A stretch of 64,000 nt of DNA from Macrostomum hystrix (Eukaryota; Animalia; Platyhelminthes): assembly GCA_950097015.1 (NCBI GenBank), contig CATNEN010000024.1:5394001-5458000 (forward strand), in the 5' to 3' direction. The notes under the pieces are model-generated. The model had not been told where the DNA came from. It saw only the letters and a program-made list of their open reading frames with translations, and made no database searches. How positions within the stretch are numbered: the first letter of the stretch is position 1; the number at the start of each line of letters is the position of its first letter. Made by a program: the position numbers and the translations under genes. This document shows positions 11,575-38,825 of this stretch, piece after piece.

Positions 11575-11890
11575 CGTGAGAGGTTGTAGCCTAGTGGTTA
11601 GGGCGTCGGACTCACGACTTGAAGGTCGGGGGTTCGATCCCCGTCTTCACTTAAACAAATTGTGTTCTTTAGCAAGACACTTAACTCTGCATTGCTTCAG
11701 TTCACCCAGCTGTTTAATGGGTACCAGCATCAGCTGGGATAATTGAAGGTGGGTGTGGCGTCCCCCCAGTCCATGGACTGAACAGCTGTACGCAGTCTTC
11801 AGATGCGCCGCGCAATAGCTGCGGCTGTGCTGTCGGCTGCACATCTGACTCGATTAGGGCAGGTGTAATCAATTATTATTAATTATTACG
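11575..11890 (+). mobile_element. tRNA-derived CORE-like SINE, family B
   Basis: A box TAGCCTAGTGG, B box GGTTCGATCCC, then TTTAGCAAGACACTTAACTCTGCATTGCTTCAGTTCACCCAGCTGTTTAATGGG (resembles the CORE domain), and an ATT tail. Second copy at 20444. Confidence 0.8.
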
Positions 11891-12462
11891 CTCGTATGAT
11901 TCAAATTTATCATTGAAATCATTGACATCGTTCATGACTTTAATAACTTCACATTTACCTTCGCGAAGACATCTTCAAAGATACTAAACCCTAATGTCCA
12001 TAAAGAGAAACATTTATTTAAATTTATTAATTCGAACACTTGCTAAAACTTTTTAAAGAACACGAGTATATTCTCGAGATTTAGCAAGGCATCATTATCA
12101 AGTTAATGTGATTTCTAAGCAACTTTTCAGCTTATTCGTTCTAACAGGCCTGTTCTGCACTGCTACAGACACTGCTACATACAATCTGAAAGGAAGTCAT
12201 TCCATTTATTCCGAGCTGGCTCACTGTGAAGCTCTGTGCTCATTGCTCAAACAAACGGAGATTTTACCCACTCCATGCCTTAATTGATGCAGTAATTACT
12301 TCAGGAAGTCTGCTAGCCTGCACCTAGGCATTGCGCAAATCTGATGATCCGCGTTTTTGCCGATCACACTTCTGTTCTGCTTGAAGCTTTCTGCCTTCCT
12401 TTCACGGATAAATATCTTCCGCTTAACAGACGACCCTTTCCTCTATCTCTTGCCTCCTACCG

Positions 12463-13000
12463 TATTCTCTCCTCCTACCCCGCCTTCTCTTCTCTGTCCT
12501 CCTACCCTGTCTTCTCTCCTCTATCTTCCTACCCTGTCTTCTCTCCTCTGTCCTCCTACCCTGTCTTCTCTCCTCTGTCCTCCTACCCTGTCTTCTCTTC
12601 TCTGTCCTCCTACCCTGTCTTCTGTCCTCTATCCTCCTACCCTGTCTTCTCTCCTCTGTCCTCCTACCCTGTCTTCTCTCCTCTGTCCTCCTACCCTGTC
12701 TTCTCTCCTCTGTCCTCCTACCCTGTCTTCTCTCCTCTGTCCTCTTACACTGTCTTCTCTCCTCTATCCTCCTACCCTGTCTTCTCTTCTCTGTCCTCCT
12801 ACCCTGTCTTCTCTCCTCTGTCCTCCTACCCTGTCTTCTGTCCTCTATCCTCCTACCCTGTCTTCTCTCCTCTGTCCTCCTACCCTGTCTTCTCTCCTCT
12901 GTCCTCCTAACCTGTCTTCTCTTCTCTGTCCTCTTACACTGTCTTCTCTCCTCTGTCCTCCTACCCTGTCTTCTCTCCTCTGTCCTCCTACCCTGTCATC
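12463..13000. repeat. 27-bp pyrimidine-rich minisatellite (CTCTCCTCTGTCCTCCTACCCTGTCTT), ~20 copies
   Basis: Directly visible tandem array. Confidence 0.97.
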
Positions 13001-13837
13001 TCTTGTTTTTCCGCCTTCTCTCCTCCCACCCTGTCTTCTTTCGCATTTCCCGGTCGTCTCTCCTCATTTACTATCCTTATTGACGATTTTTAATGCAATC
13101 AACAGAAAAGTACAAGTTTAGCATTTATATGCAAAGCAGTTTGAAAACCTCATTGAGAGCTAGGAATTTTTACTGCAACTGTCTCTCAGTTTGCACTCTT
13201 TTCAATACTGGTAAGAGGATAAGACTGGGATTGGAATGTCATTGTTCTAATCTGTTTTAAGCGAAGCAATCTGAATTTGTTAAAAATTGTTCTATCAAAA
13301 GCACAGGGAAACTCCACTCCGGGTCTGTACAGCATTTAGATTCTCGAATGCCTTTTTATTTTGTGATAAGGGATTCTAGAGTCTCTCGCCTTCTCGCCGC
13401 GCTGCCGCCAAATCAATTTTGACGCACACCCTTACCTCGCAAGTTGAGCTTGCATGCTGCGGACACGAGCCCAGCTGATCCGTGCCTTTGGGCCGATATA
13501 TCCGCTTGACAGTCGCACGCGCACGCTCTAGCAGACACTCGCCACAATGCTCCCTACTGAGCTGGCCCCCTCAATTATTTCAACCTCGGGGGGACAGACA
13601 ATCGCTGTCTTCAAACGGGTACAATTCAGTAGCCGAAGCAGTTTTCTGCGTGTCCCCTCTCCAGCAGGCCAGCGAATCGGCTCGCTTTGTCGGACTAAGG
13701 CAGTTCTGCAAAAAGAATGCGAAAATGGTTTTCCTCTAGTCGTGACGCAAAAGACTCGTATCGCACAGTCAAGCATTGCTTCTAAATGCGGGCTTATTCT
13801 GATCGTCTGTGATCTGGAAACTCAAAATATAGTTGGC

Positions 13838-19826: not shown

Positions 19827-22800
19827 TCATGTCGACCGGGGCAGCCAAAGCCGCTTGACTTCCTTCGCCTGAGCGGCAATCTTCTCGGGCTCCGAGGCTG
19901 CCAAGCAGGCGGACGCGCAGGCGGCGATACAGCTGACCAGGCTGCGGCCGCAGCAGGCGCCCAGGCAGCTGGGCAGATAGGTCAGGAAGCTCTCAGGATT
20001 GCCAACGGCCCGACGCAGCTGGCCCTGGTAAAAAGTCCTCCAGGCCTGCTCGAGTGCATCGCCGTTTGCTGTGGTGTCCTCGGCGAAGGCGAACAGCGTG
20101 ACAATGCAGGCAGCCAAGGAGGCGGAGTCGGCGGCCTGGCCCTCTGAGGCCAGCAGGTAGGTTGGGTCGGGTATGGCTACTGTGCAAGGGCTGTCGGCTT
20201 CTGTCTCTGAGCCTGGAGGGCCGCTGGCAATCTGCGAGTGATGCATCGTGTGTAATTGATAGACTACACCAGAGCGTCTGAGGTGCTTGGACAGATAGTC
20301 AGGCACTCTCTAGTTTTGAACTCATCAACTAGTGACTTGAGCAAACCAAGCTTTCTCTAGAATACAGAGGGTTAGAGTAGAAGCAGAGAGAATGTTACGA
20401 TTCGTCGGGAAATCGCCAAGTCTAGCCCATATAGATTACTGCAGGTTGCAGCCTTGTGGTTAGAGCGTCGGACTCACGACTTGAATGTCGGGGGTTCGAT
20501 TCCCGACCCCATTGGAACAATTTGTGACCTTTAGCAAGACACTTAAACTCTGAATGGGTACCAGCATTAGCTGGGGTAATTGAGGGTGGGTGTGGCGTCC
20601 CTCAGTCCATGGACTGAACAGCCGTACACAGACTTCAGATGCGCCGCGCAATAGCTGCGGCTGTGCTGTCGGCTGCACATCTGGCCCAATCAGGACAGGT
20701 GTAATCTATTATTATTATTATTACAATTATTATAATTATTTCTTTTATTTTTATTTTTTTGATTTTATTTTTACTTTTATTGAAGAGCCTGATGCCAGCG
20801 CAGACCATTGACTTACCAGCACATTGGCGGGGCTGTAGTCCAGTGGCCGATAGTGGCAGCTCGCTGACTGCACCTTGGCGTAGCACATCAGCAGGCTGTG
20901 CAGCCATACCAGCCTATCGGACTCGGAGATCGAGCTCGGCTGGAGCTCGGCCAGGCTGCGAAAGCCTGCTCCACGGTTGACAACGGATAGCAGAAGCCGG
21001 CCATCGGGACTGCCAGTGTCCGCAGCCACACTGGAGCTGCCGTAGCTGAAGCCCTCTTGACACAACCAGCTGAACTGCACACAATCCGGCAGATTGCTCC
21101 TGGCAGGTTGGAGGAGTTGTAACTCGAGATTGAGCAATGTAAGTTAAGAATTGTCTTATCAACTGAGCATTCGACGTTCATCGAAGTTCACCTGAGTCGG
21201 ATAGCGCTTTGGGCGAATCGCTTGAGACAGTCGGAAGGCAACCGGAGGCTGCGGCAGAGCAGCTCAGTCGGCCAGCCGCCACTAATCCTCGGTCTGAGCT
21301 CGTGGCGACTCCGCTCGCTAAGCTGGGGACAGCCAGGCAGGCTTGTGAGCTGGCAGTGCTGGCTCAACCTTTCACCTGGTTTGTGAATTAAAATTCATTG
21401 TTAATTAGACTGTTTCGTCATTCCACGAGTATTTATCGTGCGAGTACAGGAAATAGCGAACTTCTCACATGGTCCGAGTAAGTGCTTGCTTTATCTGACT
21501 AATATACGATATCAGCTGTTTAAGTATGTGATCAAATCCATAAAAACGGTATTTACTCGTACATTTGTTTACATAGATCCTAGCAATATCTCAAGGCCCG
21601 AACGCCAATACTCACGTTCCCCATTGTCAAAGGAGGCTGTCCAGTCAAGCTCAGTGGCCAGGCCATCGAGATAAAAGTGCAATACTGTCATCTTACGCTT
21701 CAGTGGCTTCAGTCGCTGCAGTTTATCGGCCTGGTGGCCTGTACACTGCTGCAGGTCTCTTAGCTGCGCCTCTAAACGTTTCTCAATATCTTCTTTCTTC
21801 TCTCGCATCCTGGCGCAATAGACGTTTATCACATGTTCAATCAGGGCTGTTAGTTCAACACTGGACAGGAAATAGTCGAGCAATCGGCTCCGCTTGTCAG
21901 GTGTCTTATCATTGAGAATGTTGGCGAACTCAGGACTGGCTAACAAGCATGGTAGGGCCTCGCGCATCCCGTTAGCAATGTGGCTGGCGCACAGCTCGCT
22001 GAACTCGGAGTCGTTAGGCTCGAAGACGCTCGCAATGATGGCCAAGTCGTTTTTGCAATCCTCCAGAGAATCTGACAGTCCGTCCAGAATGTTGGCGGTT
22101 GCCTGGCGCAAAATGAGGCCGACAAAGGCCTGCTTGTAGCCGGACTTCAGTTTAGCACCAAGATGGCTGGCTACGGCATCTTTAAAGTTGCACAGAAGCC
22201 GGACAGCCTGCAGGGCTGCCTGACTGCCATGACTGCGGTCCTTCTTTAGCCTTCTGATGAGTTCCGCCTCGGCTCTGCGCATGGCAAGGTTTTCGTCCAC
22301 TTGAACTTCACTTCTAGCACCATCGCGCACGAACACAGCTTTCAACTGGTTCAGCTCGCTGTTTGGATCGCTCAGGTCCAGCATTGACTCATCGGAAGAA
22401 AGAGAGTGGAGAGATTTGGTGATCCTCTCGTAGCTGTCGTTAATGACGCGCAGTGCACGGGACATCAGCTCCATTGGTGTCTTGGCTAGCTGGGATTTAA
22501 GCGAGGCAGACAGCTTAAACACCAGCAGGTGGACGAAGGCCAGCATCATTTGACTCTTCATTGACGACATCGCTTCGCGCAATTGCTTCCAGCCGTTAGT
22601 GTAGATCAGTGCAGCAATGCGGGCCTCCAGTTCAAGGAAGTTGTCTAGGTAGGGCGCGTGCAACACGGTCTTCTTTAATAGGAAATGCTTCACTGATTTG
22701 GCCGACACACCGAGCAGAGCAATCTCGCTCTCGGTGCTGCCGCTTTGGTCGACGCAGCCGGGATGCATTTTGTGCATCTCATTTCTGACGCTCTTCATTC

Positions 22801-24290
22801 GCTTCAGTGTGTGATCCCTGCAGTATTCCGAGTACTCAAAGCCTTTCGAGCTATTCTTCAGGCACTCGATCACTGCCTCTGGATCGTCTGAATCAATATC
22901 TTCGTCCAAGTCCAGTTCAAGGTCGTTCTGGTCAATGAAAAAATTTTTTATATCGCCGTCGACTCGATTAGCGATGAAAATCTTCTGCAATGCACTGTGC
23001 TGCTCCATTAGGAACTTGATGTTCTCGCTGTCCTAAAATTTGGGAAGAGTTTGCTTACAATGGTGTCTAAGGTTTCGGGGCTCTGTATAAGCGTCCTAAT
23101 GTTCTCATCCATCTCATCTAATGGCCAGCCCAACGCAGGCACGCACTCACACAGGTGTGTACATCTGCCCCGACTTTCTCATTGTCAGATAGTGTACACT
23201 TTCACTGTGCCTTGGAGGTTGGCTCTAAAGCGGACAAAAATTGCATGACAAGCCCCGCCGCGGAATCGAGCTCCGGGACCTTGGTCTGAGAGGCAGACGC
23301 GTTAGACCGCTCTGCACTCACCCCCCAAGCCTCAACAGCGTTTTTAATAGCCAAATTTACGAGTATGACTGGGCCGCAAAACTCCATCACAACTGGTGGA
23401 GGGACACCAATGATTGCCGTCAGTCTGAGCGGCAGTCCCGGTCCCATCTACCCGCCCACGGAAGGTCCTTCTGAACCAGTAAGTCAAGCATTTTCTAGAT
23501 CTTGTTATTAAATTGCAATTTAACCAGCTAAACTGCTACACATTGCTATGAATGCAGTTGAACTCACAGGTATTGGCTGGTATCCAACTGTGCCGTCCAT
23601 CACGTAGATAACCACGGCGGATTCGACACTATTTAAAAAGCAGCGAACTGTCTCATTCATGCGGGCATCCTCGCCCATGCCAGGACTGTCCACTAGGTGC
23701 AGATTGTGCTGCAGCAGCTCGTTTGGCACCGAAATTCTAACCAATGTGCCCTCCTTCTGTTTATGCCTGTCGTCACCTTTCAGGTCGATGTGCTTTCTCA
23801 GTTCTAAGACGTCTTTAAAGGGAGTCTCTTCTAGTAGACTCTCGTCAGTCGAAACGTCAACAACCGACACTGTTTTGGCCTGACCGTAGCTAGCGGACGT
23901 GATTCTGGCAGTGCAGACATATTCGGCTGTGGGGAAAAGTCCGCCGGTCTGGCTTCCATTCGCGCTGTCAGGCCAGTCGCGCAGCAGCTGGTTCAGCAGT
24001 GTTGACTTGCCCGTGTTGCTGCGACCAAACACTATTAAGGATAGTTTGAGCTGGCGCTGGAGAGATCTGCCCACCTCATCCAGGTTGCTGATGTGCCAGT
24101 CATTATCCGTAGCTTCACTCTCAACCTTCAGTTGCTGCATAATTCTCTTGAGCTCGCCAAGGCACTCCATGAGGCGGAGGAAACGCGACTCTCTGTACTG
24201 CAGCGCCTCAACCAGGGTGCGTCTAGACGACTCAAATCGGAGCACGTAGGCCTCGATCTCCGGCTGCTGTTCACTCTGCGACGTCGCCAT
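19827..24290 (-). CDS. Dynamin-like GTPase + helical region + degenerate protein-kinase domain (DSTYK-like architecture); complement(join(19827..20309,20817..21099,21192..21375,21616..23032,23568..24290)), ~1029 aa
   Basis: G1 GRSNTGKS, G2 CTARIT, G3 DSPG, G4 NRVD. Four GT-AG introns with consistent phases 0, 1, 2, 0 give one 3090-nt ORF. The C-terminal exons have kinase-like spacing (LVWLHSLL..LDYSPANVL; PDPTYL..AADSASLAAC). Confidence 0.8.
20444..20745 (+). mobile_element. SINE family B (last intron of the GTPase-pseudokinase gene)
   Basis: Near-colinear with 11575..11890 but with part of the CORE-like segment deleted; ATT tail. Confidence 0.8.
23135..23325 (-). mobile_element. SINE family A, 3'-truncated (intron 1 of the GTPase-pseudokinase gene)
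   Basis: Matches the family A head and 5' body. Confidence 0.75.
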
Positions 24291-26175: not shown

Positions 26176-29163
26176 TCAGCACGTGGTGTCCATCGCCAGG
26201 ATCTCTTCGTAGGTCAGCGCCCGACTGAAAATCGCGAAGCAGAGAAACTCCCCCTTGAACATGTTCTTCTCCTCGATAGCGTAGCCAAGTCTGATGGCAC
26301 TCGGAGTGACAACAGAGGGTCTCCTGGCATTAATTCTCACAGCGCGCTCCATACCGGAGACAAAAAGTCGGGCGCCGTCACATCCGTTGATGATAAATGC
26401 CAGCGACACCATCTGGTCGGTGCTGCCGATCGGCATTACGGCGTCTACGGATTGGAAACTGCACGGACCGATGAAGAAAAAGTATACACTGCCTGATTTT
26501 TCGTAAAAAAAGCCAGGTCGGTCATAAGAAGGCCCAGCTGAATTGTTATAGACGCTGAAGAAGGCCCTGTTGTTTCTAGCGGAGGATTGGTACGTGCGCC
26601 GCACCTTGACAAAGAAGGTCGAGTTGCACGGCGGATTGGCAAGGAAACCAGCCAGCCCTAGGAGGTCCACGTAGGAGCTGTGGTTGCCTTGGAAATGTAT
26701 GCCGCCGCTGCCGTTCTGACTGACACCCTCAAACTGAACTCCGGAGATCGTCATTGAGCCGCCGTTGAGAAAGCGTTGATCGAGGCCTAGTAGCAGCGGC
26801 ATGTCTTGGGCATCCGAGATAAGTTTCAGGTAGCTAACGCTGCCGGGTCGGCCTTGCCAGTCGCTGGCCCATGCACTCGAGTTGCCGAGCCAGCAGTTGG
26901 GCGCCACGTGTTGCGCAACTCGACAGGTCGGGTCGGCTGCACATTCAACTTGACAGCTGGCCGAGGCCTTCACGCCAGTCAGCTGACGGGTTTTCGAAGA
27001 GTAGCTTGCACCTGCTGTTGGCGCAGCTGCTGGGACTTGACGGAAGGACACTCTGCCACTGCTGATGCTAGAGACTGTCAGTCTCAACTGGGACAGACTG
27101 CGTTCGAGGAAAGAGTGATACATTCCCTTGTGGTTTACGAACCAAGTTCTATGGTAATGATTAGTCATTTTCTCAATTGGTCTCTGGTGTGACTGTCGAA
27201 GCATCACATTTCTAGAAATGAAGATCAGTATTTAGTATCAAATAAATACAACCCAGTTCATAATTCATCATGGACACCAGTCCAGTTCATTGTTCATCAT
27301 TGACACCAGCCCAGTTAATTACTCATCATTGACACCAGCCAAGTTCAATAATCACCATTGACATCAGCCTAGTTTATTATTCAACACTGATACCAACCCA
27401 GTTCATAATTCATCATTGACACCAGCCCAGTTAATTATTCATCATTGACACCAGCCAAGTTCAATAATCACCATTGACATCAGCCTAGTTTATTATTCAT
27501 CACTGATACCAACCCAGTTCATAACCGCTGCAGTGAGCCCTAATATTCGCTTTCTAGGGCTTAACGAAATTAATAAAATACAAAAGGCATGCAGTATTTG
27601 CTCATCGTGACATTTTTGCGTATTAAACTGGTGAACAAAATGGCTTGATTTTTTGCTGTTTTCTCTGTATGGAAGCATCGACTAAACTACATGAAGATGC
27701 ATTTGTTTGAACTCATCAGAGGCCAGCAGACTTAATATTCTGGTGACACCATCTCACATTTCATGAATATAGGGCTTAAAACCGGCTTTCCACTTAAGAC
27801 GATAAACCTGTCCACTTCGTCCACTTCTTCGGCCATTGTTTGAGGATGGTAAATGTCTGAGACTTGTACAATTTTATCTCTTCAGACTCCTAGAGCAAAC
27901 AGAGAAGAAATAGCGAGCTGGCAGAAAGCGCAAGAGAAATCGATATTACATCTCTTTTTTTCTGCATGCAGTCGTTTAGTTTGACCAGCGTCGAATTTTT
28001 ACGTTTAGACTCCCGAAAGTATATTAGCGGGTCTTTTATCGAATGGAGAAGTGAGGCATTGAGGATCCATCATTGAGGATTTCAAGGACTGCGAAGTCCA
28101 TTTCCCACACTCTAATTTTCCGCTCTATCCGCCGAAAAAAACTTCCAGAATTAAACAATGGCTATCGTTGAGATGTCTCATCGGGGATTTCTGGTTGCAA
28201 AACCACCAATATAGGGATAATTATTCTTCTCATTAAATTTCATCAGTAAGCACCATAAATAATAATAATAATTGCAGGAGGGCTGCGGGCAATGGCACAC
28301 CATTTAGTGACACTAGACCCGCAGCCAGCGAGGAGGGAATTCTGCCCATTTCGCTGACTCCTGAGCACACACGCACACAGATACTGTACGCAGGCATACG
28401 CTCACACACGTGTGTACATCTGCCCTGACTTTCTTATCGTCAGGCAGGGTACACTTCACTGTGCCTTGGAGGTTGGCCCTCAAGGGCGTAAATTGCACGA
28501 CAAGCCCCCAAGCCTTCTCTCCGCGGCTGCGCCCCAAATAAATGTGGCCTCGCCGTGGAATCGAACTTAGGGACCGTGGTGCGAGAGGCAAACGCGATAA
28601 CCGCTCTGCCACCGACCCCCCCAGTAAGCACCATGCATATAGGCTATTATTGCTGATTATATTGCTAATGATTGTAATATTGAACCAATATGGATTCGGC
28701 ATAGAGGTTTATTTAGAGCAATACGGAGCCTTGTCACCAGCATCTTCGACAGGAATAGCTAAATATCACGACGATGCTGATGAGCGGCTTCGAAAATTTG
28801 TAAATCGCAAATGGCGGAATATTTGATCCAAATGATGCATTTTCACAAAAACCAGTCATTCGGTTTGGTATTTAAAATATCTCCTGCTCTTTCCCCACGG
28901 GAAAATTAGCGAGGTCTTTCTACTGTTAAGCCTTCAGATCGTTATCTGAAGCAGGTTAGGAGAGTATGCGTGTTGAATTCCACGTCGAGGTGAGCAGAAG
29001 ACGTGCAAACATTTTGTAAAATGCTACGTGACTTTTCACTGCAAATAGCAAAATAGCTCAAAGCTACGACACAGGAACAGATTCTATCCCAGCGGATGAA
29101 AATAAAATTTGATCAACAGTTCACTCACATGAGCAGGAATGCCACTGAGCCAAGAATGAGCAT
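26176..29163 (-). CDS. Secreted PAN/apple + ConA-like lectin/LamG (pentraxin-like) protein; complement(join(26176..27067,29129..29163)), ~308 aa
   Basis: PAN-like SCQVECAADPTCRVAQHVAPNCWL and LamG3-like C-terminus FKGEFLCFAIFSRALTYEEI. A 35-nt exon (AACAAAATG context, MLILGSVAFLL|GTGAGT) splices in phase 2 to CTAG|CATC, giving the signal peptide MLILGSVAFLLIISSG. Exon 1 is less certain than exon 2. Confidence 0.72.
27250..27525. repeat. ~27-bp tandem repeat (TTCATCATTGACACCAGCCCAGTTAAT) with a ~108-bp higher-order period
   Basis: Directly visible; four unit variants recur in the same order. Confidence 0.85.
27550..27860 (-). pseudogene. Possible decayed piggyBac/PGBD transposase fragment
   Basis: Across stops and frameshifts: EFKQMHLHVV (cf. 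RF.QI..LHF), KIKPF (cf. KIRPL) and CHDEQIL (cf. SIDEQMI), in the expected order. Weak match; no TIR or TTAA ends found. Confidence 0.35.
28257..28621 (-). mobile_element. SINE family A, full length, with 13-bp TSD
   Basis: Head GGGGGGTCGGTGGCAGAGCGG...AGTTCGATTCC, (ATT)n tail. CAGTAAGCACCAT is repeated at 28244..28256 and 28622..28634. Confidence 0.93.
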
Positions 29164-36899: not shown

Positions 36900-38825
36900 A
36901 TGCTTTCTCAGGCTCAAAAAACGCAACCGCCATCATCACAGCAGCAACAGCAGCCGCCTCACTCGTCGCAGCAACAGCAGCAGCAGCAGCTTCAGCCTGT
37001 GCTCTCTCGTTACCAGCTATCTGAGCAAGTGGACCTTGTAGATGCTTATAACCTGAAGCAAGTAGACTTGACCAGGGCCAAACAGCCGCTTTGGCTAGTG
37101 AAGGTGCCAAAATATCTGGACGAATTGTGGCGAAAGGCTCGCGACAAGCAGGAAGTCGGCTATTTAGTTACAACTGAAGGTGGAGGCGACAGCGGCAGCG
37201 GAAAGGGTGTCAACTTGAGACCTTCGGAGGCCGCGTTGTCTATGGCCGATCGGCCAGAATTGATTCCTCGCGAGCACTCATTTATTATTGATCCATCTGG
37301 CGGTGGCCGTAATCAACAGACTCTGCTGGTGCTGCAGGTCTGTCCTCTTCTAGGGACCGAAGGTTATTAGGCTTAGCGATGTATTTAATAATAGATAATA
37401 TTTGGTGGGAGAAGGACCTTATTAAACAGTAGAACTACCAATGGGGAAAACCAACTTTTTTCGCGCATCCTTTGAAACAAGAAACAAGTCGCCAGCTCTT
37501 CGGGCCGTCGAGATATTCAAGGGTTCTGATCAGATTTTTCCCATAAGCGCTAGTGTATTTCATTCGCACTGCGAAATCGGCCTTTAAAATTTATCTAGAT
37601 AGACTGCTGGACCTTCAAAGGCTACAACAGGTGGAACTATGCCACTATGGACATCCTGACTCAAATGTTTTCATTTCAGATTTCAATGATAAAGCATAAA
37701 TATTAGGCGCAGCTCAACCACATGACATTCTGGGGAAGGAATTCTTCCCTGCTACTAAAACGGGCAGCAAAATGGCTTGGTAGTCCTACTGTTAATTCCC
37801 TTGTACACCATCCGCAGCAGGAGGAGTTCACCCGGAGAAGGACCCTATTTAATCCCTTGTACACCATCCGCTGCAGGAGGAGTTCACCCGCCGGTCCGGT
37901 CAGCCGGACGGTCAGTTGGAGTCGCGAGCCTCTCTCTACGGCACCGTGCGTCGTCGAGTCGAATGTCGACCGCAGAATCCGGCTGATCATATGCGCCTGA
38001 AGCGGCATCAGATGGAGCAGAGTCGCAGCGGCAAGTTTCAGGCTTCCCAGCTGGATAAGCAGGTACAATTTGATAGAAATAGCAACGACACCTTAACCCC
38101 AGTTGTTCTTGAGGTGGATTACTAGCCGCAGCTATAGCCGGGGCCAGCCATCTAAATCTCCTTTCCAACTAATTCTGGCGCCAGTCTTGTTTAGTGCTCA
38201 GAAGCTTTAATCACTCGGCTAAAACCTACAAATCACTGCAAAGTTGGACTTATTACTTAATGGTCGGGGGTTCGAATCCCGACTCCACTTGCAAGACACT
38301 TGACTCTGCATTGCTTCAGTCAACCTACCTGCCTGTCATTTATTTATCGTGCGGTAAATGTGCCGTACCTGTGCGGTCTAGAATCATAGTGTTTAACTTA
38401 CCTGTCGGAGTAACCAAGTTGCCCTTAATAATTCGCCAATTCTCAAGGTACAGCCGCGCAAGCCGATGGTGTCCCACGCCGGCATCGATGCGATGAAGCA
38501 GAAGCGCAAAGATGAGGGCAAGAAGCTGCGCGACTCGCGCGATGCTGTTCAGGCAAAGCTATTCGTCGCCTTCGAGAAGCATCAGTACTACAGTGTACGA
38601 GATCTGGTTAACATCACGAAGCAGCCCCTGCCGTTTCTCAAGGACATTCTTAAAGAGATCGCAGTGCACAATAACCAGGGCCCCCACAAAAACATGTGGG
38701 AACTCAAGCCTGAGTACAGACACTACAAGCGACAGCAGTCTGCTGATGACGGCGAAGGCGGTGCCGGCGCTTCCAACTCGATGGAGGACACGTCCGGTGA
38801 TGCCGACGATTTGCAAGTTGTGTGA
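36900..38825 (+). CDS. GTF2F2: General transcription factor IIF subunit 2 (RAP30); join(36900..37337,37877..38062,38448..38825), ~333 aa
   Basis: DLTRAKQPLWLVKVPKYLDELW, IPREH, RVECRP..HMRLKR, and winged helix LFVAFEKHQYYSVRDLVNITKQP..LKDILKEI..HKNMWELKPEYRHY. Both introns phase 0. Confidence 0.95.
37427..37680 (-). mobile_element. Truncated inverted copy of the CAGTAG-TIR element (GTF2F2 intron 1)
   Basis: Starts CAGTAGAACTACCAATGGGG. GGCTACAACAGGTGGAACTATGCCACTATGGACATCCTGAC is the reverse complement of the internal segment in the other two copies. Confidence 0.6.
38240..38340 (+). mobile_element. SINE family B fragment (GTF2F2 intron 2)
   Basis: GGGGTTCGAATCCC B box followed by GCAAGACACTTGACTCTGCATTGCTTCAGT. 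Confidence 0.65.

What the first reader, a model, noticed from the sequence alone, without database searches (positions are those of the whole stretch)
19827..24290. Dynamin-like GTPase with intact G motifs fused to a pseudokinase
Seen: a five-exon, ~1029-aa ORF that the six-frame track splits into unrelated-looking pieces. G1-G4 are all present (GRSNTGKS, T, DSPG, NRVD), followed by a long helical region. The kinase-like C-terminus keeps D-x4-N (DYSPAN) but has no Gly-rich loop, has Arg at the apparent VAIK lysine position (ELLCR), and lacks HR and DFG. Established: DSTYK has a large N-terminal region plus an active kinase; dynamin-superfamily GTPases (Mx, GBP, bacterial DLPs) remodel membranes and act in defence. 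Inference: a GTPase-active, kinase-dead protein, possibly a membrane-remodelling or immune effector.
Basis: partly seen in the sequence, partly recalled or inferred. Interest (0 to 1): 0.75.

Follow-up and report, generated by a model that had tools for sequence, protein, structure and literature searches.

The report
Flatworm dynamin-like GTPase with dead-kinase tail
This is a real five-exon flatworm gene that joins a seemingly working mitofusin/BDLP-type dynamin-like GTPase to a C-terminal domain that is probably, though not provably, a burnt-out protein kinase; the architecture is undescribed in the papers I could search, but it recurs in this genome.

Summary
A minus-strand gene at 24290..19830 has five exons with canonical GT-AG sites and an in-frame CDS of 1003 codons.

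- **GTPase:** exon 1 is a Dynamin_N GTPase (E 1.8e-13). G1 GRSNTGKS, G3 DSPG and G4 NRVD are conserved in all complete relatives. By sequence and fold it is closest to BDLP and mitofusins.
- **Gene model:** Macrostomum lignano protein models (987 and 1021 aa) and an own-genome paralogue on contig C30 carry the same N-to-C order. They support all four junctions.
- **Kinase reading, only partly supported:**
  - No Pfam or PDB sequence hit.
  - Two AlphaFold runs were low-confidence, and fold searches of them found no kinase.
  - A profile-profile comparison aligns beta5 to the catalytic loop with real kinases (P 0.013, 0 of 100 shuffles).
  - Language-model neighbours are kinase-like.
  - DLP genes with bona fide kinases lie 22-54 kb upstream.
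- **Not tested:** homology to DSTYK, and any immune or membrane role.
- **Distribution:** the helical stalk found only Macrostomum proteins among 1.84 billion representatives.

The scan has already noted this architecture elsewhere in this genome (s1-310556, s1-327251, s1-351195).

The parts
23568..24290 (-). Exon 1 (241 aa): N-terminal helix plus most of the GTPase domain (G1-G3). The ATG at 24290 is preceded by an in-frame TGA two codons upstream.
   Evidence: Pfam Dynamin_N E 1.8e-13, residues 86-233. Donor GTGAGT. 59% identical to P0004.
24003..24026 (-). G1 / P-loop, GRSNTGKS
   Evidence: Invariant in the window gene, P0004, P0003 and the C30 paralogue.
23904..23936 (-). Switch-1 region FPTAEYVCTAR, holding the candidate G2 threonine
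   Evidence: The pattern LFPTA..C.AR is conserved in all family members. Which Thr is G2 is inference.
23679..23690 (-). G3, DSPG
   Evidence: VDSPGMGE is invariant in the family.
21616..23032 (-). Exon 2 (472 aa plus 1 base): end of the GTPase (G4, G5-like GVSAKS), then the long helical stalk
   Evidence: Acceptor ttttag, donor GTGAGT. An exhaustive phmmer search found only two Macrostomum clusters. The AF2 model of paralogue P0003 is all-helical across 279-780.
22958..22969 (-). G4, NRVD
   Evidence: ANR[VI]D is conserved in P0004, P0003 and the C30 paralogue.
21192..21375 (-). Exon 3 (60 whole codons plus two split codons): candidate kinase N-lobe start, with ELLCR at 21265..21251 (Arg where the VAIK Lys is expected)
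   Evidence: 62% identical to P0004. The assignment to beta1-beta3/alphaC is inference, and hhalign was not significant here.
20817..21099 (-). Exon 4 (94 aa): candidate beta4-beta5, hinge, alphaD-alphaE and degenerate catalytic loop HYRPLDYSPANVL (20855..20817)
   Evidence: hhalign against 13 kinases of this genome: 58 columns, score 24.4, P 0.013, 0 of 100 column shuffles. Against the kinase exon of the neighbouring DLP-kinase gene: score 19.9, P 0.032, 0 of 100.
19827..20231 (-). Exon 5 (134 aa plus stop): short activation-segment remnant, PDPTYLLASEG (APE-like), helical C-lobe-like region, Cys-rich ...ACLAASEPEK tail
   Evidence: 56% identical to P0004. No significant kinase similarity on its own.
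20232..20309 (-). Open-frame extension upstream of exon 5. Alternative acceptors at 20285 or 20309 would add 18 or 26 aa (HLRRSGVVYQLHTMHHSQ...).
Evidence: The orthologue's spacing favours 20231. Unresolved without RNA data.

Best explanation
This is a single, intact, lineage-restricted flatworm (Macrostomum) gene of about 1003 aa.

- The N-terminal ~270 residues form a BDLP/mitofusin-class dynamin-like GTPase with complete G1-G4 motifs, so it most likely binds and hydrolyses GTP and dimerises through its G domain (inferred).
- About 450 residues of helical bundle follow, corresponding to the neck and trunk of BDLP-type proteins (partly shown).
- The last ~270 residues are most likely a strongly decayed protein-kinase-like domain. 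It keeps the beta5/hinge/alphaE/catalytic-loop core, including D-x4-N. It has lost the Gly-rich loop, the VAIK Lys, HRD and DFG, and it has a shortened activation segment.
- That domain therefore cannot phosphorylate. It probably serves as a docking, regulatory or dimerisation module, possibly for the active-kinase relatives encoded nearby (inferred).
- The gene belongs to a family of dynamin-like GTPase plus (pseudo)kinase genes that is expanded in this genome.
For: Gene model:
- Canonical splice sites and an in-frame 3009-nt CDS.
- Colinear M. lignano proteins P0004 (987 aa) and P0003 (1021 aa) span all junctions.
- The own-genome paralogue on C30 shares three of the four intron positions and phases.
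- Identity to the orthologue is even across exons (59, 53, 62, 49, 56%), so the tail is as constrained as the GTPase.

GTPase:
- Dynamin_N E 1.8e-13.
- The family profile's best PDB hit is BDLP 2j68, E 2e-9.
- Foldseek of the P0003 model is topped by BDLP (E 1e-9), MFN1/2, Fzo1 and IniA.
- The G motifs are invariant in the family.

Kinase-like tail:
- hhalign against 13 kinases of this genome gives 58 colinear columns, P 0.013, 0 of 100 shuffles.
- hhalign against the neighbouring DLP-kinase's kinase exon gives P 0.032, 0 of 100.
- HMMER's best, non-significant alignment falls on the same alphaE/catalytic-loop site.
- ESM-Atlas feature neighbours of the C-termini of both P0003 (0.92, 191 shared features) and P0004 (0.92-0.93) are kinase-like clusters.
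- Genes on the same contig 22-54 kb upstream, and one on C1, pair a homologous GTPase (E 6e-11 in a small database) with bona fide kinase exons.
Against: - No Pfam kinase hit even at E 10.
- No PDB sequence hit for the tail.
- HMMER scores against a kinase HMM are negative.
- hhalign probability is only 1-3%, and the parts before beta5 and after the catalytic loop are not significant.
- Both AF2 models are low-confidence in the tail (pLDDT 26-45 and mean 43.9). Foldseek and VIA on the tail model found no kinase.
- The spacing from the catalytic-loop Asn to the APE-like motif is about 12-15 residues shorter than in ordinary kinases.
- Stalk similarity to the neighbouring DLP-kinase family is not significant (P 0.059, 1 of 40 shuffles). 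Common descent of the whole architecture is therefore not shown.
- GTP hydrolysis, membrane binding and expression are untested.
- No hydrophobic paddle or transmembrane segment was found.
Confidence: 0.65

Rival explanations
1. The gene and its GTPase are as described, but the C-terminal ~270 residues are a lineage-specific domain unrelated to kinases. On this view the HRD/D-x4-N-like and APE-like strings are chance resemblances.
For: - No Pfam or PDB sequence hit.
- AF2 gives no confident fold, and fold searches give no kinase.
- Only about 58 of ~270 columns show profile similarity, with an hhalign probability of 3%.
- ESM feature scores of 0.9 or more occur for 4-10 in 100 shuffled proteins, according to the tool's own note.
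Against: - The one significant local alignment lands on the alphaE/catalytic-loop core, at the right distance from both domain ends, and no shuffle reaches its score.
- Two 35%-identical paralogues each retrieve kinase-like clusters independently.
- GTPase-homologous genes in the same genome carry true kinases in the same position.
Confidence: 0.25
2. The five-exon model is wrong. The GTPase-stalk exons and the C-terminal exons would then belong to two adjacent genes, or the tail exons would be untranslated or decaying sequence.
For: - No RNA evidence was available for this genome.
- The exon-5 acceptor is ambiguous among 20231, 20285 and 20309.
- One database model of the orthologue (P0001) differs from another (P0004) in internal segments.
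Against: - All junctions are canonical and in phase.
- P0004 and P0003 join the same parts in M. lignano.
- The paralogue on C30 has the same order and shares three intron positions.
- The tail exons have long open frames and are 49-62% identical to the orthologue, like the GTPase.
- Exons 3-5 offer no obvious independent start.
Confidence: 0.05
3. The tail is kinase-derived but not inert. It would bind a nucleotide or carry out an atypical transfer using the retained Asp and Asn, as some 'pseudokinases' do.
For: - The Asp of D-Y-x-P is invariant in all four family members. The Asn is kept in the window gene and its orthologue.
- An Arg stands near the expected Lys position.
Against: - There is no Gly-rich loop, no DFG metal-binding Asp and no alphaC Glu.
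- The paralogue has Cys in place of the Asn.
- No test of binding is possible with these tools.
Confidence: 0.1

Closest known systems
Bacterial dynamin-like protein BDLP (Nostoc punctiforme, PDB 2j68/2j69) and mitofusins/Fzo1
   Same: - Dynamin_N GTPase with GxxxxGKS, DxPG and NRxD motifs.
- An N-terminal helix before the G domain, and long helical bundles after it.
- Best sequence-profile match in the PDB (E 2e-9) and best Foldseek matches.
   Different: - No transmembrane segment or clear hydrophobic paddle.
- An extra ~270-residue C-terminal kinase-like domain.
- Stalk sequence found only in Macrostomum.
- The structural match rests on a low-confidence model (TM 0.2-0.45).
Dynamin-like GTPase + protein kinase genes of the same genome (C24:5339845-5372111, C1:16674740-16684636)
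   Same: - Same order: DLP GTPase, helical region, then a kinase-type domain.
- The GTPase is detectably homologous (E 6e-11 in a small database).
- Some copies there are also pseudokinases, e.g. 'HGNLRPSNVFV' against 'DYRPSNVL' here.
   Different: - Their kinase exons hit kinase HMMs and PDB kinases strongly. Ours do not.
- Their P-loop is GQTKSGKS, and an intron separates G1 from G2.
- Stalk similarity is not significant.
DSTYK (dusty protein kinase, 'RIPK5' in many databases)
   Same: Large non-kinase N-terminal region followed by a C-terminal kinase-type domain. PMC9573974 treats DSTYK as a kinase distinct from RIPK1-7.
   Different: - DSTYK's kinase is active, and here the domain is dead.
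- Homology of either half to DSTYK was not tested, because no tool gave me a DSTYK sequence.
- The searches for DSTYK with 'dynamin', 'pseudoGTPase', 'GTPase domain' or 'GTPase' brought up no paper about such an N-terminus; only one of the returned papers was read.
MLKL-type and other pseudokinase effectors
   Same: A degraded kinase domain attached to a non-kinase effector module. On this analogy the pseudokinase would act as a switch or docking surface.
   Different: The effector module here is a GTPase, not a four-helix bundle. No sequence relation was tested, so this is only an analogy.

Membership tests
Dynamin superfamily (BDLP/mitofusin class) | Dynamin_N-type G domain above the curated threshold | tested here: met
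   PF00350 E 1.8e-13, 51.3 bits against a cut-off of 27. The same holds for P0001, P0002 and P0003.
Dynamin superfamily (BDLP/mitofusin class) | Intact G1 (GxxxxGKS/T), G3 (DxxG) and G4 (N/TKxD or NRxD) motifs | tested here: met
   GRSNTGKS, DSPG and NRVD at the coordinates given. They are conserved across the family.
Dynamin superfamily (BDLP/mitofusin class) | Helical neck/trunk bundles after the G domain | tested here: inconclusive
   The AF2 model of paralogue P0003 is all-helical from 279 to 780, and Foldseek aligns 769 columns to BDLP at E 1e-9. However, the model has pLDDT mostly below 60 and TM 0.23-0.33.
Dynamin superfamily (BDLP/mitofusin class) | Membrane-binding paddle or transmembrane segment | tested here: not met
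   The highest 19-residue Kyte-Doolittle mean is 1.44 in the stalk and 1.61 in the Cys-rich tail, so there is no clear transmembrane segment. An amphipathic paddle cannot be excluded.
Dynamin superfamily (BDLP/mitofusin class) | GTP hydrolysis stimulated by G-domain dimerisation | not testable with these tools
   Needs a biochemical assay.
Protein kinase-like superfamily (as a pseudokinase) | Significant match to a kinase profile (Pkinase / PK_Tyr_Ser-Thr) | tested here: not met
   No Pfam hit at E up to 10. HMMER with filters off, against a 13-kinase HMM, gives -2 to -3 bits.
Protein kinase-like superfamily (as a pseudokinase) | Profile-profile similarity over the conserved core (beta5 to catalytic loop) | tested here: met
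   hhalign gives 58 columns, score 24.4, P 0.013, 0 of 100 shuffles, and P 0.032, 0 of 100 against the neighbouring DLP-kinase exon. This is weak: the probability is 1-3% and the flanks are not significant.
Protein kinase-like superfamily (as a pseudokinase) | Bilobal kinase fold | tested here: inconclusive
   AF2 pLDDT is 26-45 in the full-length model and averages 43.9 for the tail alone. Foldseek and VIA found no kinase. The order of predicted secondary-structure elements is compatible with a C-lobe.
Protein kinase-like superfamily (as a pseudokinase) | Catalytic residues: Gly-rich loop, VAIK Lys, HRD, DFG | tested here: not met
   All four are absent. Arg stands in ELLCR, 'YRPLD' replaces HRD, and there is no DFG. 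Only D-x4-N is kept. This pattern fits a pseudokinase and rules out an active kinase.
DSTYK family | Sequence homology of the N-terminal region and kinase domain to DSTYK | not testable with these tools
I did not verify that.
DSTYK family | Active dual-specificity kinase domain | tested here: not met
   The catalytic motifs are missing.

The most novel reading that the evidence does not exclude
The window gene, its paralogue and the neighbouring DLP-kinase genes could be flatworm relatives of DSTYK that still carry the ancestral, working dynamin-like GTPase. DSTYK's unexplained N-terminal half would then be a decayed BDLP/mitofusin-type GTPase. Kinase-active and kinase-dead family members would pair up, through G-domain or (pseudo)kinase dimers, as a GTP-gated signalling or membrane-tethering machine.
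Probability: 0.25. Interest if true: 0.8.

Novelty: new variant of a known kind. Interest (0 to 1): 0.55.

Why it matters
- **New domain pairing.** Dynamin-like proteins and pseudokinases are each well studied. A protein that couples an apparently competent BDLP/mitofusin-type GTPase to a kinase-derived domain did not turn up in the papers I could search.
- **A natural series.** The genome offers active-kinase, dead-kinase and (per earlier notes) dead-GTPase versions. This could show how a GTPase switch and a kinase scaffold are wired together.
- **Possible light on DSTYK.** If the link to DSTYK holds, it would give the first functional idea for the large N-terminal region of that disease-linked 'dark' kinase.
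- **Experimental route.** Macrostomum lignano is a tractable model with RNAi and transgenesis (my own knowledge). The orthologues P0004 and P0003 can therefore be tested directly.

Tried and rejected
- **Word-indexed homologue searches.** Exon 2 alone found nothing. The P0003 tail found only its own cluster, and full-length P0003 found only Macrostomum proteins.
- **Exhaustive phmmer with exon 2.** Only two Macrostomum clusters matched. The stalk therefore gives no bridge to other families.
- **PDB sequence searches** with exons 4 and 5 and with the family profile gave no kinase.
- **AlphaFold2.** Full-length P0003 with an 11-row alignment reached mean pLDDT 50.6. The single-exon tail of the C30 paralogue with 6 rows reached mean pLDDT 43.9. 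Both are too poor in the tail.
- **Fold searches on the tail model.** Foldseek and VIA-wide returned only helix-hairpin noise.
- **hhalign.** Global mode failed. The N-lobe and post-catalytic parts were not significant against kinases. The last exons were not significant against the neighbouring family's last exon, nor was the stalk against the neighbours' stalk.
- **The look-up of encoding contigs for P0004.** The protein is not on record, so the M. lignano intron could not be used to choose the exon-5 acceptor.
- **tRNA and Rfam scans of the introns** found nothing.
- **Literature searches** for DSTYK with dynamin, GTPase or AlphaFold brought up no paper about a GTPase-like N-terminus in DSTYK, judged from titles, abstracts and one paper read.
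- **Rejected readings.** The contig is not bacterial or human: it has spliceosomal introns, and all protein relatives are M. lignano.
- **Left out on instruction.** The joined spliced protein of the window gene was never built, searched or folded. Exons were used one by one, and database proteins stood in for the full length.
Full report
**What is there**

The region 19827-24290 carries one gene on the minus strand of a eukaryotic contig with spliceosomal introns.

Reading the three minus-strand frames gives five coding pieces. They join through canonical sites:
- E1 24290..23568, donor GTGAGT.
- E2 23032..21616, acceptor ttttag, donor GTGAGT.
- E3 21375..21192.
- E4 21099..20817, donor GTAAGT.
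- E5 20231..19830, then TGA.

The phases fit and the CDS is 3009 nt, or 1003 codons. An in-frame TGA lies two codons upstream of the ATG at 24290.

A third candidate lies at 20285. I prefer 20231 because it reproduces the 21-residue spacing between 'NVL' and 'DPT' seen in the M. lignano orthologue. Only RNA data can decide.

Every search used single exons by reference, or full-length database proteins.

**Whose gene it is**

An exhaustive phmmer search of 1.84 billion representative proteins with exon 2 found only two clusters, both from Macrostomum lignano.
- P0004 (A0A1I8G8J1, 987 aa, found) is the orthologue type. Its identity to the window exons is 59, 53, 62, 49 and 56%.
- P0003 (PAA84057.1, 1021 aa) is a paralogue type at about 35-40% identity.
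- P0001 is a shorter model of the same locus as P0004 and lacks the G4 segment.

The window's own genome (220 Mb, 42 contigs) has one paralogue, on contig C30. I read its exons.
- It shares the intron after 'GYxPxP' (phase 0).
- It shares the intron after the stalk (phase 1).
- It shares the intron before '..VxxSW' (phase 2).
- It lacks the fourth intron.

Two independent protein models and a paralogue with conserved intron positions make a single transcript very likely, although I have no RNA evidence. The tail exons are as conserved as the GTPase, so the tail is under constraint.

The contig is not human. All relatives are flatworm proteins, and earlier notes on this window also name Macrostomum.

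**The GTPase**

- Exon 1 matches Pfam Dynamin_N at E 1.8e-13, above the curated cut-off.
- GRSNTGKS, the switch-1 stretch LFPTA..C.AR, VDSPGMGE, ANR[VI]D and GVSAKS are conserved in all complete family members.
- A profile of the family finds BDLP (2j68) as its best solved relative, E 2e-9.
- An AlphaFold2 model of P0003 is moderately confident in the G domain (pLDDT 70-86). It is all-helical from 279 to 780.
- Foldseek ranks BDLP first (E 1e-9, 769 aligned columns), followed by mitofusin 1/2, Fzo1, IniA and other bacterial DLPs.

The protein is therefore a BDLP/mitofusin-class dynamin-like protein with nothing missing from its nucleotide-binding motifs. That it hydrolyses GTP is inference. 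I found no transmembrane segment or strongly hydrophobic paddle, so membrane binding is open.

**The tail**

Across the family, P-x-D-Y-x-P is invariant. The Asn is kept only in the window gene and its orthologue, and the paralogues have Cys.

Direct tests of a kinase relationship mostly failed:
- No Pfam hit even at E 10.
- No PDB sequence hit.
- Negative HMMER scores against an HMM of 13 kinases taken from this genome.
- Low-confidence AlphaFold2 models, both in the full-length context and for the single-exon tail of the C30 paralogue.
- Uninformative fold searches.

Three lines do point to a kinase origin.

First, hhalign of the family's C-terminal alignment against the 13-kinase alignment gives one local alignment of 58 columns. 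It runs from beta5 through the hinge and alphaE to the catalytic loop, with a two-residue insertion before the Asp. The score is 24.4 and P is 0.013. None of 100 column-shuffled queries reached that score (null mean 12.9, maximum 21.9). The same site is picked against the kinase exon of a neighbouring gene (score 19.9, P 0.032, 0 of 100) and by HMMER. The segments before and after it are not significant.

Second, language-model feature neighbours of the C-termini of both P0003 and P0004 are kinase-like clusters (0.92 with 191 shared features, and 0.92-0.93). These are leads, not proof.

Genes on the same contig 22-54 kb upstream of the window, and another on contig C1, combine a GTPase homologous to ours with helical exons. 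The GTPase match is E 6e-11 in a small database. Those genes also carry kinase exons that hit kinase HMMs and PDB kinases strongly, with motifs such as HRDVKLANLLV and SDFG. One of these neighbours is itself a pseudokinase with 'HGNLRPSNVFV', close to 'DYRPSNVL' in our family.

Stalk similarity between the two families is not significant, so common descent of the whole architecture is plausible but not shown.

I put the kinase-derived reading at about 0.7.

**How it probably works**

- Shown: an intact DLP G domain, a long helical region, and a conserved C-terminal domain without kinase catalytic residues.
- Inferred: GTP-dependent G-domain dimerisation and conformational change, as in BDLP and mitofusins.
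- Inferred: the dead kinase domain acts as a docking or regulatory surface, possibly pairing with the active-kinase relatives.
- No evidence: a membrane-remodelling or immune role.

**Comparison and novelty**

The closest solved relatives are BDLP and the mitofusins. The closest architecture is the DLP-kinase genes of this same genome.

The DSTYK comparison could not be tested, because no tool gave me a DSTYK sequence. The DSTYK searches brought up no paper about a GTPase-like N-terminus, judged from titles, abstracts and the one paper I read.

A search for dynamin-like proteins fused to pseudokinases found no description of such a protein.

The M. lignano homologues are in UniProt and NCBI only as 'Dynamin_N domain-containing' or hypothetical proteins.

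The scan has already flagged the same architecture on other DNA of this genome (s1-310556, s1-327251, s1-351195). This window adds another member rather than a first sighting.

I class it as a new variant of a known kind, of moderate interest.

Noticed in passing
G000:C24:5339845-5372111 (22-54 kb before the window start; loci L044-L047): A cluster of four genes. Each has a dynamin-like GTPase (P-loop GQTKSGKS), helical exons and a kinase-type domain. The inner copies have bona fide kinase motifs (HRDIKLANVLV, SDFG). An outer copy is degenerate (HGNLRPSNVFV). Earlier notes s1-351195 and s1-351237 already cover it.
   Followed up: partly
G000:C1:16674740-16684636 (loci L048-L050): Another dynamin-like GTPase plus active kinase gene of the neighbour type. 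One open frame that also holds kinase sequence begins with a long Pro/Thr/Gln-rich repeat (PKPTL/NPPPQT...).
   Followed up: partly
window 20400-20700 (intron 4); also 11628-11646 and 38266-38284: A repeat with a tRNA-like T-arm string (GGGGGTTCGATTCCCGACC; 3 copies in the window at 3 or fewer mismatches, against 0.01 expected). ARAGORN and Rfam call no tRNA, so this is probably a tRNA-derived SINE.
   Followed up: partly
window 23150-23330 (intron 1); window 28313-28702; L045 and L047: Translations of intron 1 resemble open frames elsewhere in the window and in the neighbouring cluster. Examples are '...RSRSSIPRRG...' and '...QPPRHSESVHYLTMRKSGQMYT...'. This suggests a dispersed repeat family. 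I did not characterise it.
   Followed up: no
L017:3530-4438 (intron of the C30 paralogue): A tandem repeat of about 900 bp with a 39-bp unit. In one frame it reads WLSHRQESEDLVE about 23 times. It lies inside an intron.
   Followed up: no
G000:C30:342790-342903 (L016): A short match (45% over 38 aa) to the end of exon 1, about 3 kb upstream of the C30 paralogue. It may be a duplicated exon remnant.
   Followed up: no
window 12344-13121: Overlapping open frames made of a tandem repeat (SSYPVFSPL / PPTLSSLLC units), in a stretch with strongly negative GC and AT skew.
   Followed up: no
P0001 versus P0004 (M. lignano database proteins): UniProt A0A1I8HDE4 (904 aa) is 95% identical to A0A1I8G8J1 (987 aa). 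It lacks the G4 segment, part of the stalk and part of the N-lobe-like region. It is most likely an incomplete gene model or an isoform.
   Followed up: partly
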